Assembly (NCBI GenBank): GCA_002269645.1
Contig: NIVC01000251.1
Location: 682,001 to 746,000 of the forward strand
DNA: 64,000 nt
DNA from: Macrostomum lignano
Lineage: Eukaryota
Direction of reading: 5' to 3'
The notes beneath the pieces were generated by a model. That model was not told the origin of the DNA, did not search any database, and worked only from the letters and a program-made list of their open reading frames with translations. Positions 26,801-35,800 of this stretch are shown piece by piece. Position 1 is the first letter of the stretch. Every line of letters begins with the position of its first letter. The translations under genes and the position numbers were made by a program.

Positions 26801-29800
26801 CACCTGCTCTACTCTATCCCTTCACCCGCTCTACTCTCTCCCTTCACCTGCTCTACTCTCTCCCTTCACCTGCTCTACTCTCTCCCTTCACCCAATCTAC
26901 TCTCTCCATTCACCTGCTCTACTCTATCCCTTGACCCAATCTACTCTATCCCTTCACCCAATCTACTCTCTCCCTTCATCCAATCTACTCTCTCCCTTCA
27001 CCTGCTCTACTCTCTCCCTTCACCCAATCTACTCTCTCCATTCACCTGCTCTACTCTATCCCTTCACCCAATCTACTCTCTCCATTCACCTGCTCTACTC
27101 TATCCCTTCACCCAATCTACTCTCTCCATTCACCTGCTCTACTCTATCCCTTCACACACACTCTACTCTCTTCCTTCACCCGCTCTACTCTATCCCTTCA
27201 CACACACTCTACTCTCTCCCTTCACTTGATCTACTCTCTCCCTTCACCCGATCTACTCTCTCCCTTCACCCGCTTTACTCTCACTCTTCATCCACTCTAC
27301 CTCTCACGGTTCACCCGCTCAACCTCTCATCCTTCACCCACTCAACCTCTCACCCTTCACCCGCTCTACTCTCTCCCATCACCTGCTCTACTCTCTCTCT
27401 TCACCAGCTCTACCTCTCATGACTCCACAGAGTTGAAATATCCAATACATTTATGGTTCAATCTATTTGATTTGGCGTGTCAGACAGTCTGAGATTCTGT
27501 CAGGGATCAGGGTGTAATGATATTCCTGCATTTGCATCATGGACCTTTTCTTCTCCCTAATGTCTATATACCTTGAGGAAGCAGATCTGCATAATGCGGG
27601 CATATGATAATTACAGCGTATTAGGCTAAAGAGGAAATTAGTACCATTGTAATTTGTACCGTCCTTTTCATTTCTTTTGCCTAATTAGTAACTTTGTAAG
27701 TCAATCTCACTGAAGCAGCCAAAGAGTGGCTTTTGCACATCCTTGCAAAACGGAACCAACCCTTTCTACCGCTATTACTTTCTTTGGATTTTAAAAGTAC
27801 ACAATTTGCTTCTTTCCTGGGAAGTTGGCCAAGATATTCTTCTAGCGGAAAGCTATTGATATCTGAGAAATATAAGTGACGCAAATGAGAATATCTATTA
27901 GATTTTAAATAAAATATAGATTTGAAAAAATGCTTTGAAGTTAGAGAATAGAGGAAGATAGGAAATGTAGGGATATGGGGATATGGAGGTGGGAGATGTA
28001 GAGAGATAGGAGATGTAGGGAGATGGGTAGAGAGGTAGGGAGATGGGCAGAGAGGTAGGGAGATGGGTAGAGATGTAGGGAGATGGGTAGAGAGGTAAGG
28101 AGATGGGTAGAGATGTAGGGAGATGGGTAGAGATGTAGAGAGATGGGCAGAGATGTAGGGAGATGGGTAGGGATGTAGGGAGATAGGTAGAGATGTAGGG
28201 AGATGGGCAGAGATGGGAAGAGATAGGAAGGTTGGAGTTGTAGGGAGATGTGAGATGTAGGGAGATGGGAAATGTAGGAAGATGGGAAATGTAGGGAGAT
28301 GGGAGATGTAGGGAGATGGGAGATGTAGGGAGATGGATTGGTATATTTAAAGACAGACCCTCTGCATTAGCAAGATCAGTATTGTCAGCTCTTCATCTGT
28401 CTTACCTTCTTTTATTAGAACATATTCTGCATGGTAACATCTATAGAATTTGGAATTCGATGACTGAGATAGCTTTGTTCAATGTCAAACTTTAAGACCA
28501 CAAACTTTCAGGAAATCTTTGCTCAGCCACATCCGGCAGGCCAGCGTGCTCAACTGCGGTCAGACCTGCCAAAGAATGAAAGAGTTCTACATGGCTCCCG
28601 TGGTTCGATTCGTGTATAACACGGTGAGCTTTACCGCCGAGCTCATGCGTCTAGGGAGCCTAATTTGATGTGTCTGTAGTGCCTAATTTGATGTATCTGT
28701 AGTTCCTAATTTGATGTGTCTGTAGTGCCTAATTTGATGTGTCTGTAGTGCCTAATTTGATGTGTCTGTAGTGCCTAATTTGATGTGTCTGTAGTGCCTA
28801 ATTTGATGTGTCTGTAGCGCCTAATTTGATGTGTCTGTAGCGCCTAATTTGATGTGTCTGTAGTGCCTAATTTGATGTGTCTGTAGTGCCTAATTTGATG
28901 TGTCTGTAGTGCCTAATTTGATGTGTCTGTAGTGCTTAATTTGATGTGTCTGTAGCGCCTAATTTGATGTGTCTGTAGTGCCTAATTTGATGTGTCTGTA
29001 GTGCCTAATTTGATGTATCTGTAGTGCCTAATTTGATGTGTCTGCAGTGCCTAATTTGATGTGTCTGTAGTGCCTAATTTGATGTGTCTGTAGCGCCTAA
29101 TTTGGAGTGTCTGTAGTGCCTAATTTGATGTGTCTGTAGCGCCTAATTTGATGTGTCTGTAGTGCCTAATTTGATGTGTCTGTAGCGCCTAATTTGATGT
29201 GTCTGTAGTGCCTAATTTGATGTGTCTGTAGCGCCTAATTTGATGTATCTGTAGTGCCTAATTTGATGTGTCTGTAGTGCCTAATTTGATGTGTCTGTAG
29301 TGCCTAATTTGATGTGTCTGTAGTGCCTAATTTGATGTGTCTGTAGTGCCTAATTTGATGTGTCTGCAGTGCCTAATTTGATGTGTCTGTAGTGCCTAAT
29401 TTGATGTGTCTGTAGTGCCTAATTTGATGTGTCTGTAGTGCCTAATTTGATGTGTCTGTAGTGCCTAATTTGATGTGTCTGTAGTGCCTAATTTGATGTG
29501 TCTGTAGCGCCTAATTTGATGTGTCTGTAGTGCCTAATTTGATGTGTCTGTAGCGCCTAATTTGATGTGTCTGTAGTGCCTAATTTGATGTGTCTGTAGC
29601 GCCTAATTTGATGTGTCTGTAGTGCCTAATTTGATGTGTCTGTAGTGCCTAATTTGATGTATCTGTAGTGCCTAATTTGATGTGTCTGTAGTGCCTAATT
29701 TGATGTGTCTGTAGTGCCTAATTTGATGTGTCTGTAGTGCCTAATTTGATGTGTCTGTAGTGCCTAATTTGATGTGTCTGTAGCGCCTAATTTGATGTGT

Positions 29801-32800: not shown

Positions 32801-35800
32801 CGAGAGGGTACAAGGGTATGATTCGACAATAATGTAGAGAAAGTGGATGATAATACGTGAGATTTGAGAGCGAGAGGGTGAGATTAGAGTAAGTGAGATT
32901 AGAGTAAGTGAGATTAGAGTAAGTGAATAAGTACGCTGGTATTTGAGATGAGAGTGAGGCAGCAATCTTAATATCGGTTAAAAATCATAATGAATTCAAT
33001 TAAATAAAGCAAAAGCATTTTGCTATTATTATTGATTTGCAGACAGCGGCTGCCTTGATGAGGGCAAGTGTCCCCACTGGACAGCAAAATGGCTACTGCC
33101 GATCATGCTCGGTGTCTATGTTCTCTTGACCAACATCCTCATGTTTAACCTGTTGATCGCCATGTTCTCCAGCACCTACGAATCGATCAATCAGTTCTCT
33201 GCTCTGCACTGGAATTACCAACGGTACAGCATGATCAAGGAGTACATTGAAAGGTCACCGCTAGCTCCACCGCTGATCATTTTCTGGCATGCTTACGAGC
33301 TTGTGTTCTTTATCCAGTTGCGATATCAGGGTCGCAAACTATCGGAACTGGAGGACCCGCTGAGAATCAGTTATAAAGACAATGTTAAGAAGGAGCGCGA
33401 ACTCGTCAAGTGGGAGCACATGAAGGCGATGGACTTTTTGAGACAGGATCAGGAGTGTCATGGAAAGAAGGTGGGTTTTGATTGGCTGGGCGATGGTGAG
33501 TGCTGGGGCAGAGAATCGGAGGATGGGGTGGTGGGTGCTGGGGCAGAGAATCGGAGGATGGGGTGGTGAGTGCTGGGGCAGAGAATCGGAGGATGGGGTG
33601 GTGGGTGCTGGGGCAGAGAATCGGAGGATGGGGTGGTGGGTGCTGGGGCAGAGAATCGGAGGATGGGGTGGTGGGTGCTAGGGCAGAGAATCGGAGGATG
33701 GGGTGGTGGGTGCTGGGGCAGAGAATCGGAGGATGGGGTGGTGGGTGCTGGGGCAGAGAATCGGAGCCTATTAGTTTAGCGCGGCGCTCTGATATTCCAG
33801 TGGTCCAGGCTCGATTCCAAGAGCAGATTAATGAGCAGACTCATTTGATGAGTATTGAGCAGACTCAGAGCAGTACATGAGCAGATTAATTTGGTGCTAA
33901 TTTGGAATCTCGGCTTGGCTCTGCTCGTGCAATTAACGTCCTTGAGGGCCAACCCCCAAGGCACAGTGAAGTGTACATGCCTAACGATAAATAAAGTCAG
34001 GGCCGCTGTACACTCCTGTGTTAGTGTGTGCCTGTGCGTATGACTGCGTACGTATCCGCGCGCTGGTGTACCTGCTCAGGGGAGCCGGCGGAATGGACAG
34101 AAAATGCCTCTCGCCGGTTGTGTGACAATGTCGCTTAAAGTGCGCCAGGGTGCACACAGCCTCTAACTAAACGGGGTGGCGGGTGCTCGGTCGAGAAATC
34201 AGTGAATGGGGTGGCAGGTGTAGAAGCATCCCTACATCTCAGTAAAAAATAACAAAACACAGGGCGGTCGCTCGGACTCAAAGTCTGTCATAGTCAGGAC
34301 TTCTGGTCCCCAGCTGGGTGCCGGCGGCCTTCTCCCGGCAGCGGCTGACGTGGCCAAGCAGATGTCGGACGCGACTAGCGGCATCGGGCTGGAACTCGAG
34401 AAGAAATTTAAAAGCGTAGACACTCAGCTGACAAAGATTAGCGCTGATTTCGATCAGAGATTAACCGACCTGTCAAACACGCTGAATGGATTCAGTGTTG
34501 CTGTGCAGGCGCTTCGGGAAGGCCAGGAGCGGCTGGCCTCAGTGCAGCAGGCGCGAGCAGTGGCCGGGTCGGTAAACACAGCCGAGGCGCAGCAGCAGCA
34601 GCTGAACCAACTCGAGCAGCGAGTTCTGGAAGCCGTCACCACAGCTTATCAGTCAGCCCCGCCAGCCTGGTTCCAGGAAATCGCCAGAACAGCCGCTGCG
34701 GAAGCTCTGGCCTCCACTCCGGTGTCAGTGGGGCAGCTGGACCAGGAGGTGCTGCAGCAGTTGGCCTCGGCCAGCTCCAGCAGCGGCACAGCGGAGAGGC
34801 GCTGGCGTCGACGTGGCGCCGCTCCGGCCAGTTCGGCAGGTGCAGATCTGACCTCCGGCAGCGCCGCTGTTGAAGGCGGCGGATTGCAGGGCTCCAGCCT
34901 GACTTCTGCTGCTTCAAAAGCGGCTGGTGCGACAGCGGCGCGTGTCGCTGAGCCCAGAGGAGCCACCGCGGCGACAGCAGCAACGGGAGCCACCGCCGCG
35001 GAGGAAGGAGACGATGAGGAGGACGATTTTGACGACAACGAAGATCTGGAAGAGGACGCGGCCACCATAAGGCCGGTGGTGGACGATCCGGGAACCGGGC
35101 GTCTGATTGAATACCGGAGCCTGCAGCACCGCCTGTGGCGCTACGTGCCGTTCAACTTTGAGCAGTACCCGGGCATGCGGATGAATGTGCCGCCGGACAA
35201 GATCCCGTGGGAGGTGAGACTGGGGAGCCTGGCAGGTTTGGCTGTTTCACCGGTTACATTTACCGGTTTCACATAGTTTTACCGGTTAGAATTACCTGTT
35301 TCACTGGTTAGATTTACCTGTTTCACATAGTTAGATTTACCTGTTTCACTGGTTAGATTCACCTGCTTCACTGGTTAGATTTACCTGTTTCACTGGTTAG
35401 ATTTACCTGTTTCACTGGTTAGATTTACCTGCTTCACTGGTTAGATTCACCTGTTTCACTGGTTAGATTCACCTGTTTCACTGGTTAGATTTACCTGCTT
35501 CACTGGTTAGATTTACCTGCTTCACTGCTTAGATTTACCTGTTTCGTCTGTCAGATATTCTCGTTTCACCTGTCACATATAATATTTACCCTATTTTTTC
35601 TTTTCAAATTAGTAGTATATAACAGTATCAAGCCTCATAAATATTAAATTTCAGATTGACTACCGTGATTACTTTGCATTCGATGCGTCTGAAGAGGTGC
35701 TTATCTTTCCTAACGAGGAGAGCTACGATGGGCCAACAGTGTAAGCATACGAATTAGCACACAATGCCTCATTCTTTTGTAATTATTTAGCTACTAATTA

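What the first reader, a model, noticed from the sequence alone, without database searches (positions are those of the whole stretch)
28618..33254. Praziquantel-pocket signature: candidate TRPM_PZQ orthologue with Ile/Glu variant residues
Seen, in reconstructed numbering: S1 N1263-T1264..Y1267, S3 W1323..D1327, S4 R1386..Y1389-I1390..F1393 and TRP helix E1550-Y1551..R1554. From memory, the Schistosoma TRPM_PZQ pocket is N1388/T1389/Y1392, W1451/D1455, R1514/Y1517/T1518/F1521 and D1677/Y1678/R1681. The spacings agree to within 1-3 residues, and overall size (about 2,200 aa) and the NUDT9-H tail also fit. Inference: this is the anthelmintic-target orthologue, with Thr->Ile and Asp->Glu changes that predict lower PZQ sensitivity.
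Basis: partly seen in the sequence, partly recalled or inferred. Interest (0 to 1): 0.75.

Follow-up and report, generated by a model that had tools for sequence, protein, structure and literature searches.

The report
Known Macrostomum praziquantel-channel gene, one copy

Summary
Observation confirmed. They align column for column with Schistosoma rodhaini TRPM_PZQ, whose numbering is S. mansoni minus 766.

The window is 100% identical to Macrostomum lignano assembly GCA_002269645.1, contig NIVC01000251.1, gene BOX15_Mlig004938g3. NJ trees (79-88% bootstrap) and reciprocal BLAST place it with TRPM_PZQ. It is one of three diverged M. lignano paralogue groups that are jointly orthologous to TRPM_PZQ.

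The Asn/Ile/Glu ('NIE') pocket matches the one published for Ml.TRPM_PZQ (Rohr et al., PNAS 2022). That channel had an (R)-PZQ EC50 of 18 uM, against 0.28 uM for S. mansoni.

- Glu does lower sensitivity.
- Ile does not: Sm T1518I was about two-fold more sensitive.
- Ile and Glu look ancestral, not derived.

The twelve-residue signature is not diagnostic on its own. A different flatworm TRPM paralogue matches the window at 11/12, against 10/12 for true TRPM_PZQ.

This copy lacks one G in a GGG run in S5. GenBank therefore truncates it at 1199 aa. The lesion is probably an assembly error.

Already known; low interest.

The parts
9298..9364 (+). Unannotated 5' coding exon ([22 protein letters not shown]), part of the conserved TRPM N-terminal motif
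   Evidence: Acceptor CAG|GAT and donor AG|GTGAGA. The split codon joins in frame to 10899. Homologous to the N-terminus of paralogue Mlig001812. The same exon is used in another frame by a UniProt model.
10899..16198 (+). Exons of the N-terminal SLOG / MHR1-2 domain. The annotated start ATG is at 10954; 10899-10953 upstream is in frame and carries the C-x-C-G-x4-H motif.
   Evidence: Ungapped tblastn of sister copy g2 (P0163) at 92-100% identity with no stops. Pfam LSDAT_euk E = 5.5e-43 on P0163.
16476..26354 (+). Exons of MHR3-4 and the pre-S1 region (TRPM2-like domain), including the large pre-S1 exon 25827-26354
   Evidence: Pfam PF25508 (TRPM2) E = 4.1e-52.
28512..28623 (+). Exon encoding the first half of S1. 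It ends ...FVYNT with pocket Asn (28618-20) and Thr (28621-23).
30307..30435 (+). Exon encoding the rest of S1 (pocket Tyr 30313-15) and S2 (LLLEEVKQ, with the Glu/Gln that coordinate Ca2+ in TRPM2/4/5/8)
   Evidence: Aligned to nvTRPM2 'ieeirq'.
32024..32551 (+). Exon encoding S3 (Trp 32069-71, Asn, Asp 32081-83), S4 (Arg 32258-60, Tyr 32267-69, Ile 32270-72, Phe 32279-81), S5 and the pore loop (FGDFG)
32375..32376 (+). One-base deletion in a G run (GG here, GGG in the two sister copies). It shifts the frame in S5 and leads to a stop at about 32462.
   Evidence: blastn against L002 and L003. GenBank protein PAA87061.1 reads through in the shifted frame and ends at 1199 aa.
33043..33470 (+). 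Exon encoding S6, the TRP helix (Trp 33210-12, Glu 33240-42, Tyr 33243-45, Arg 33252-54) and the post-TRP region
34263..35213 (+). Exon encoding the coiled coil, an Ala/Gly/Ser-rich and acidic low-complexity linker, and the start of NUDT9H
35643..43973 (+). NUDT9H exons (35643-35741, 36551-36841, 37796-37945, about 38878-38916, 39675-39791, 43848-43970) and the TAA stop at 43971-73. The Nudix box is degenerate: KNFISRR where NUDT9 has REFGEE.

Best explanation
The window is Macrostomum lignano genomic DNA: assembly Mlig_3_7 (GCA_002269645.1), contig NIVC01000251.1, about 682001-746000.

The finding lies in gene BOX15_Mlig004938g3. This is one of three roughly 95-99% identical copies (g1, g2, g3) of a long TRPM channel that belongs to the TRPM_PZQ clade. 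Its domain order is SLOG/MHR1-4, then S1-S6 with a voltage-sensor-like domain (VSLD), then the TRP helix, a coiled coil, and a catalytically degenerate NUDT9H tail.

Shown here: the twelve pocket residues, their exact alignment to schistosome TRPM_PZQ, the clade membership, and the gene structure.

Taken from the literature: (R)-praziquantel sits in the cavity formed by S1-S4 and the TRP helix. It hydrogen-bonds the S1 Asn and the S4 Arg and stacks on the S3 Trp and the S4 Tyr. A TRP-helix Glu (in place of the Asp of flukes and cyclophyllidean tapeworms) reaches into the cavity, pairs with the S4 Arg and displaces the drug. The M. lignano 'NIE' channel therefore opens only at tens of micromolar. 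The S4 Ile is tolerated or mildly sensitising.

Inferred:
- This locus family is the published Ml.TRPM_PZQ. It is the only M. lignano paralogue group whose checked pocket residues differ from S. mansoni solely at Ile and Glu.
- Ile and Glu are the ancestral states.
- The Glu, together with the S2 Glu/Gln and the S3 Asn/Asp, forms the usual TRPM Ca2+ site.
- The one-base deletion in S5 of this copy is most probably a homopolymer error of the PacBio-based assembly and not a real null allele.
For: - Identity of the DNA: locus L001, fetched for PAA87061.1, is base-for-base identical to window 8954-34464. P0017 (M. lignano A0A1I8GTE3) is 100% identical over the transmembrane query.
- Pocket alignment: N T Y / W D / R Y I F / E Y R against S. 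rodhaini N T Y / W D / R Y T F / D Y R.
- Clade: NJ tree of the transmembrane region, 89 sequences, 100 replicates, gives (paralogue group B1, (neodermatan TRPM_PZQ, M. lignano clade)) at 88%. The 1008-column tree gives 79%.
- Identity and BLAST: 59% to S. rodhaini TRPM_PZQ against 44-47% to B1. Reciprocal summed BLAST scores agree.
- Architecture: Pfam LSDAT_euk, TRPM2 and Ion_trans. NUDT9H E = 2.8e-31 against PDB 1Q33.
- Published pocket and pharmacology.
- Frameshift: GG against GGG. Every other exon is present with no stop. Codon differences to g2 downstream of the lesion are 13 synonymous to 7 non-synonymous. An independently derived protein that shares g3-specific residues is intact (2 against 8 mismatches in exon 34260-35216).
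Against: - The trees are distance-based only, with moderate support.
- S. mansoni TRPM_PZQ itself was not available. A sister-species protein lacking about 766 N-terminal residues served as proxy.
- The published clone's accession and sequence (SI Table S2) could not be read. Its Glu is numbered 1495, against 1297 in the best annotated model. Identity of this locus with the cloned channel is therefore inferred.
- Paralogue Mlig001812 is also N/I/E at the three named variable sites.
- The frameshift is present in the deposited assembly, and no reads were available to test it.
Confidence: 0.85

Rival explanations
1. The gene is not a TRPM_PZQ orthologue. It is the counterpart of a different long flatworm TRPM paralogue, or is ancestral to both. 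That paralogue is group B1 here: S. spindale CAI2730782, Clonorchis KAG5451156, Taenia TsM_000429800. By its S4 Tyr it is probably the Smp_130890 group, which did not respond to PZQ.
For: B1 matches the window's twelve-residue signature at 11/12 (N T Y W D R Y I F E F/C R), better than true TRPM_PZQ at 10/12. B1's best M. lignano hit is also Mlig004938. M. lignano has no separate B1 member among the hits. Bootstrap support for TRPM_PZQ + M. lignano is only 79-88%, from NJ.
Against: Transmembrane identity is 59% to TRPM_PZQ against 44-47% to B1. B1 lacks the W-x9-[DE]-Y-x2-R TRP-helix motif because Tyr1678 is Phe or Cys. Both trees separate B1 with 98-100% support. The authors of the field treat an M. 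lignano 'NIE' channel as TRPM_PZQ and showed that PZQ opens it.
Confidence: 0.08
2. This particular copy (g3) is a real, recently inactivated allele or homeologue. The one-base deletion truncates the channel in S5, so the locus makes no functional channel, and g1 and g2 carry the function.
For: The deletion is in the public assembly, and the GenBank model stops at 1199 aa because of it. M. lignano holds three near-identical copies, so loss of one would be tolerated.
Against: The lesion is a single base in a homopolymer. No other exon is damaged. Downstream codon differences to g2 are mostly synonymous (13:7). A protein from another M. lignano data set shares g3-type residues and is intact.
Confidence: 0.2
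3. The 'praziquantel signature' is mainly the generic VSLD ligand and Ca2+ site of TRPM2/TRPM8-like channels. In the worm this is a Ca2+-dependent TRPM2-type channel with an unknown natural stimulus, and PZQ sensitivity at tens of micromolar is a pharmacological side-effect.
For: Lingula, Mya and Bulinus TRPM2-like channels share 9 of the 12 residues with the window, including Ile and Glu. Five of the residues were chosen in the original work because they are identical in human TRPM8. Human TRPM2 differs at only 5 of the 23 pocket positions, and human TRPM8 responds to (S)-PZQ at about 20 uM. The S2 E/Q, S3 N/D and TRP-helix Glu match the TRPM Ca2+ site (alignment; the site assignment rests on my own knowledge of TRPM2/4/8 structures).
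Against: This is compatible with the orthology and not an alternative to it. Ml.TRPM_PZQ is stereoselective for (R)-PZQ like the parasite channels.
Confidence: 0.3

Closest known systems
Ml.TRPM_PZQ, the Macrostomum lignano praziquantel-activated TRPM channel (Rohr et al., PNAS 2022, PMC9910428)
   Same: Same species. Same Asn (S1) / Ile (S4) / Glu (TRP helix) 'NIE' pocket, with all other checked pocket residues as in S. mansoni. Same long architecture with a NUDT9H tail.
   Different: Identity of the cloned cDNA with this locus is inferred. The clone numbers the Glu 1495, and the best GenBank model of this gene family numbers it 1297. This assembly copy (g3) carries a one-base deletion in S5.
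Schistosoma mansoni TRPM_PZQ (Smp_246790), compared here through the S. rodhaini orthologue CAH8536228.1
   Same: 59% identity over S1-TRP. Ten of the twelve pocket residues are identical in the same columns. W1667- and F1521-equivalents are present. Homologous NUDT9H with the same degenerate Nudix box. Sister clade in the trees.
   Different: Thr1518 -> Ile, Asp1677 -> Glu, Gln1673 -> Ser. The S1-S3 spacing is three residues shorter. Published potency is about 60-fold lower (18 uM against 0.28 uM).
Second long flatworm TRPM paralogue (group B1; probably the Smp_130890 group)
   Same: Shares N T Y / W D / R Y I F / E . R with the window (11/12). Next-closest clade.
   Different: 44-47% identity. 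Tyr1678 is replaced by Phe or Cys. Forms a separate, well-supported neodermatan clade. Smp_130890 gave no PZQ response at 100 uM.
TRPM2 / TRPM2-like channels (human TRPM2, Nematostella TRPM2 PDB 6CO7, choanoflagellate TRPM2 chanzyme 8SR7)
   Same: SLOG-MHR N-terminus, six transmembrane helices, TRP helix, C-terminal NUDT9H. Best solved-structure matches (E about 1e-42 for the transmembrane region, 1e-29 for NUDT9H). Ca2+-site residues conserved.
   Different: About 35-40% identity. The Nudix catalytic box is lost here. Long low-complexity inserts are present. ADP-ribose gating is not known for TRPM_PZQ.
TRPM8 (menthol/icilin receptor)
   Same: The drug pocket is the same VSLD cavity. Asn/Tyr (S1), Arg (S4) and Tyr/Arg (TRP helix) are identical.
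   Different: No NUDT9H. 10 of the 23 pocket positions differ.

Membership tests
TRPM (melastatin) cation channels | N-terminal SLOG/MHR1-2 and MHR3-4 homology regions | tested here: met
   Pfam LSDAT_euk E = 5.5e-43 and TRPM2 domain E = 4.1e-52 on sister copy P0163. All its exons are found in the window at 92-100% identity.
TRPM (melastatin) cation channels | Six transmembrane helices with a pore loop, followed by a TRP helix (W-x3-R-Y...) | tested here: met
   Ion_trans E = 1.4e-12. 159 solved TRPM chains match, the best at 1e-42. [15 protein letters not shown] at 33210-33254.
TRPM2-like channels with a NUDT9H tail | C-terminal NUDT9-homology domain | tested here: met
   E = 2.8e-31 to human NUDT9 (1Q33) and 1e-29 to nvTRPM2 over 270 residues
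TRPM2 'chanzymes' (catalytically active NUDT9H) | Intact Nudix box (REUXEE) | tested here: not met
   KNFISRR aligns to NUDT9 REFGEE. The S. rodhaini TRPM_PZQ box is degenerate too.
TRPM_PZQ | Groups with schistosome, cestode and monogenean TRPM_PZQ to the exclusion of the other flatworm TRPM paralogues | tested here: met
   NJ bootstrap 88% (293 columns) and 79% (1008 columns). Reciprocal best hits. Distance method only.
TRPM_PZQ | Conserved VSLD pocket residues (Sm N1388, T1389, Y1392, W1451, D1455, R1514, Y1517, F1521, Y1678, R1681) | tested here: met
   All ten are identical in the aligned columns. Only 12 of the 23 published pocket positions could be checked, because SI Table S2 is not held.
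TRPM_PZQ, high-sensitivity (sub-micromolar) type | Aspartate at the TRP-helix gatekeeper position (Sm D1677) | tested here: not met
   Glu at 33240-42. The published consequence is lower potency.
TRPM_PZQ | Opened stereoselectively by (R)-praziquantel | not testable with these tools
   Published for Ml.TRPM_PZQ (EC50 18 uM). That this locus is the cloned channel is inferred.
Functional gene (as opposed to pseudogene) | Uninterrupted reading frame | tested here: inconclusive
   One base is missing from a G run at 32375-76. Everything else is intact and under apparent constraint. No reads were available to decide.

The most novel reading that the evidence does not exclude
Macrostomum lignano carries three anciently diverged TRPM_PZQ co-orthologue groups: Mlig004938, Mlig001812, and the A0A1I8HSQ2 group. 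They are 68-70% identical in the transmembrane region. They differ at the S1 drug-contact positions (Asn-Thr, Asn-Ser and Ser-Thr). If all three are expressed channels with different ligand sensitivities, the single published Ml.TRPM_PZQ does not describe the worm's response, and the species offers a natural three-way pocket comparison in a tractable laboratory animal. The papers I could read do not mention these paralogues.
Probability: 0.35. Interest if true: 0.3.

Novelty: already known. Interest (0 to 1): 0.15.

Why it matters
It matters mainly as a calibration point. A reader without tools recovered a spliced, frame-corrected drug pocket across five kilobases and four introns and named the right family. 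Tools then showed three things: the case is already in the literature, one of the two mechanistic predictions runs opposite to the published mutant data, and the signature alone cannot separate TRPM_PZQ from a sister paralogue.

Practical by-products:
- GenBank model PAA87061.1 is truncated at a probable homopolymer error, which leaves the S6-to-NUDT9H exons of this copy unannotated.
- All three annotated copies appear to lack 5' coding exons.
- M. lignano has extra TRPM_PZQ-like paralogues that anyone using it as a praziquantel model should take into account.

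Tried and rejected
- The first word-indexed protein search returned only short fragments and no M. lignano match at 100%. The organism was found only with the exhaustive search.
- The exact-product look-up of the neighbouring GPCR ORF found nothing.
- The SI table with all 23 pocket residues and the accession of the cloned Ml.TRPM_PZQ is not held. A text search for the locus tags found nothing.
- Bootstrapping with Biopython's distance calculator timed out. I replaced it with a numpy Kimura-distance NJ.
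- I tested whether the ankyrin-repeat ORFs at 5749-7073 are 5' exons of the channel gene. Splice phases are compatible. However, no database protein joins them to a TRPM, the old paralogue Mlig001812 has no ankyrin exons within 10 kb upstream, and a nearer candidate 5' exon exists around 8860-8905. I rejected this as unlikely.
- An O. viverrini 'ankyrin repeat protein' hit (P0180) is not a TRPM.
- Structure prediction was not run. The tool returns no coordinates, so pocket geometry could not have been measured, and solved TRPM homologues already match at 1e-42.
- TRPM_MCLZ was considered and excluded. Its S1 His/His and S4 His/Tyr/Phe pattern is not present here.

Full report
**What is at the coordinates.**
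The window is eukaryotic DNA. Short exons on the + strand are separated by introns full of minisatellites. The finding's start, 28618, is the first base of an AAC (Asn) codon. That codon sits two codons before a GTGAGC donor. The next exon opens at 30307 with Phe-Ser-Tyr, so S1 reads FVYNT|FSYLTF across a 1.68-kb intron.

The S3-S5 exon begins at 32024. It holds SDSWNKLD and [10 protein letters not shown]. The S6/TRP exon begins at 33043 and holds [17 protein letters not shown], whose last Arg codon ends at 33254, the finding's end.

**Are the remembered schistosome residues right, and do they align?**
S. mansoni TRPM_PZQ itself was not retrievable. The exhaustive search returned S. rodhaini CAH8536228.1 (P0020). 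Its RLMYTFSF and WNYQRYQMINDYVHR motifs place Arg748, Trp901, Gln907 and Asp911 exactly 766 below the published Sm R1514, W1667, Q1673 and D1677.

In a MAFFT alignment the columns for Sm 1388, 1389, 1392, 1451, 1455, 1514, 1517, 1518, 1521, 1677, 1678 and 1681 compare as follows:

| Sequence | S1 | S3 | S4 | TRP helix |
|---|---|---|---|---|
| S. rodhaini | N T Y | W D | R Y T F | D Y R |
| Window | N T Y | W D | R Y I F | E Y R |

The literature confirms eleven of the twelve residue names. It reflects homology (59% identity over S1-TRP), not chance.

**Which organism and gene.**
The transmembrane query is 100% identical to M. lignano A0A1I8GTE3. The same 90% cluster holds BOX15_Mlig004938 g1, g2 and g3. 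The locus fetched for g3 (PAA87061.1) comes from GCA_002269645.1, contig NIVC01000251.1, and is base-for-base identical to window 8954-34464.

The intact sister copy g2 (P0163, 1954 aa) maps to 25-26 exons between 10954 and 43970. Identity is 92-100%, with no stop in any exon. The stop codon is at 43971-73.

Domains found:
- SLOG/LSDAT, TRPM2-like domain and Ion_trans.
- A C-terminal NUDT9H, E = 2.8e-31 against human NUDT9. Its Nudix box is degenerate (KNFISRR for REFGEE), as it is in S. rodhaini.

The S2 E/Q, the S3 N/D and the TRP-helix Glu match the Ca2+ site of TRPM2/4/5/8 (alignment). The site assignment itself rests on my own knowledge of those structures.

**Orthology.**
Two NJ trees were built.
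- The first used 89 transmembrane domains and 100 bootstrap replicates. It shows a flatworm-specific clade (98%). Within it, neodermatan TRPM_PZQ (Cichlidogyrus, Schistocephalus, S. rodhaini) is sister (88%) to an M. lignano clade (99%).
- That M. lignano clade contains the window's gene plus two older paralogue groups: Mlig001812 (70% identity) and A0A1I8HSQ2/JQF4/F582 (about 68%).
- A second neodermatan paralogue group, B1, lies outside.
- The 1008-column tree gives the same picture at 79%. Summed reciprocal BLAST scores agree.

B1 has Tyr at the S4 position. Among the seven schistosome TRPMs, only TRPM_PZQ and Smp_130890 have Tyr there, so B1 is probably the Smp_130890 group. TRPM_MCLZ is excluded by its His-rich S1.

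The gene is therefore a TRPM_PZQ co-orthologue, with moderate support from a distance method only.

**The signature is not diagnostic.**
Identity to the window's twelve residues:

| Sequence | Matches to window |
|---|---|
| B1 paralogue group | 11/12 |
| S. rodhaini TRPM_PZQ | 10/12 |
| Lingula, Mya, Bulinus TRPM2-like | 9/12 |

Five of these residues were originally picked because they are identical in TRPM8. Glu at the TRP-helix position occurs in every other schistosome TRPM and in human TRPM2 and TRPM8. Ile at the S4 position occurs in B1 and in the non-flatworm channels. Ile and Glu are therefore most simply the ancestral states, and Thr and Asp the derived ones.

**Already known.**
Rohr et al. 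(PNAS 2022) describe the M. lignano TRPM_PZQ pocket as 'NIE'. It differs from S. mansoni only at an S4 Ile and the TRP-helix Glu. They expressed the channel and report the following:

| Construct | Ligand | EC50 |
|---|---|---|
| Ml.TRPM_PZQ wild type | (R)-PZQ | 18 uM |
| Sm.TRPM_PZQ wild type | (R)-PZQ | 0.28 uM |
| Ml E1495D | (+/-)-PZQ | 21 uM (wild type 54 uM) |
| Sm T1518I | not specified | 207 nM (wild type 442 nM) |
| Sm D1677E | (+/-)-PZQ | unresponsive |

Their simulations have the Glu side chain entering the cavity and pairing with R1514.

Among the three M. lignano paralogue groups, only Mlig004938 differs from S. mansoni solely at Ile and Glu in the residues I could check. Mlig001812 also has T1389S, and A0A1I8HSQ2 has N1388S. 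This locus family is therefore the likeliest source of the published clone.

**The frameshift.**
At 32375-76 the window reads CTCGG-TACGGG, where g1 and g2 read CTCGGGTACGGG. The GenBank model for g3 follows the shifted frame to a stop and ends at 1199 aa. The S6-to-NUDT9H exons of this copy are left unannotated.

Evidence that this is an artefact or a very recent change:
- The lesion lies in a homopolymer.
- No other lesion is present in the gene.
- Downstream of it, codon differences to g2 are 13 synonymous to 7 non-synonymous.
- A protein from a different M. lignano data set shares g3-type residues and is intact.

I judge an assembly error the more likely explanation (about 0.8). Only reads can settle it.

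**5' end.**
Upstream of the annotated ATG (10954), the frame stays open through a C-x-C-G-x4-H motif to an acceptor at 10898. A further exon at 9298-9364 splices to it in phase and resembles the N-terminus of paralogue Mlig001812. The annotated models are therefore 5'-incomplete, which partly explains the numbering gap.

Ankyrin-repeat ORFs at 5749-5877 and 6867-7073 have compatible splice phases. Nothing else links them to the channel.

**Verdict.**
- Observation: confirmed.
- Interpretation: partly supported. The family is right, and the Glu effect is right. The Ile effect, the polarity of change and the 'anthelmintic target' framing are wrong, because this is a free-living worm.
- Novelty: already known.
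- Interest: low.

Noticed in passing
window 32375-32376; 33043-43973: GenBank protein PAA87061.1 (Mlig004938g3) ends at 1199 aa because of a missing G in a GGG run. The 12 downstream exons (S6, TRP helix, coiled coil, NUDT9H) of this copy carry no annotation, although they are intact.
   Followed up: yes
window 8860-8905, 9298-9364, 10899-10953: Probable unannotated 5' coding exons of the TRPM gene (…CAVMSW…, [41 protein letters not shown]) with canonical splice sites in matching phase. All three GenBank copies start at the internal ATG at 10954.
   Followed up: partly
window 5749-5877 and 6867-7073 (+): Two ORF pieces encoding about three ankyrin repeats (Pfam Ank E = 4e-12), with an ATG start and phase-0 GTCAG donors. 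They lie between the myosin gene and the TRPM gene. They are not annotated and match no M. lignano protein in the database. Probably a separate small gene.
   Followed up: partly
proteins P0018/P0170 (Mlig001812; locus L005) and P0019/P0024/P0004 (A0A1I8HSQ2 group): M. lignano has two further, older TRPM_PZQ-like paralogue groups, 68-70% identical in the transmembrane region. Their S1 contact residues are Asn-Ser and Ser-Thr instead of Asn-Thr, and all have Ile/Glu. The papers read do not mention them.
   Followed up: partly
window 37796-37945 (Nudix-box region of NUDT9H): The Nudix catalytic box is lost (KNFISRR where NUDT9 has REFGEE), and the S. rodhaini TRPM_PZQ box is degenerate too. The tail is a pseudo-enzyme across the clade.
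   Followed up: partly
whole window, e.g. 1-2401, 9369-10838, 26421-27418, 28658-30034, 43109-43791, 52584-54265: Almost every intron and intergenic stretch carries its own long minisatellite array with a unit of about 19-30 bp (often 20-23 bp) and up to about 100 copies. The unit sequences differ from array to array.
   Followed up: no
window 41665-42057 (+): Remnant of a DDE_3 (Tc1/mariner-like) transposase (Pfam E = 1.3e-5, below the curated cut-off) inside the last intron of the TRPM gene.
   Followed up: partly
window 48329-50035 (+): Intron-less 568-aa ORF encoding a rhodopsin-family GPCR (7tm_1 E = 2.4e-18; Srw-like E = 7.7e-17) with a long low-complexity C-terminal tail. No gene with this product is on record in the collection searched.
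   Followed up: partly
window 1 to about 2501 (+): 3' end of an annotated class-I myosin gene (Myosin_head, Myosin_TH1 and SH3 domains), according to the GenBank annotation of the contig.
   Followed up: no
window 34263-35213: The exon between the TRP region and NUDT9H encodes a coiled coil followed by about 150 residues of Ala/Gly/Ser-rich and then acidic ([19 protein letters not shown]) low-complexity sequence. Most amino-acid differences between the three gene copies fall here.
   Followed up: no
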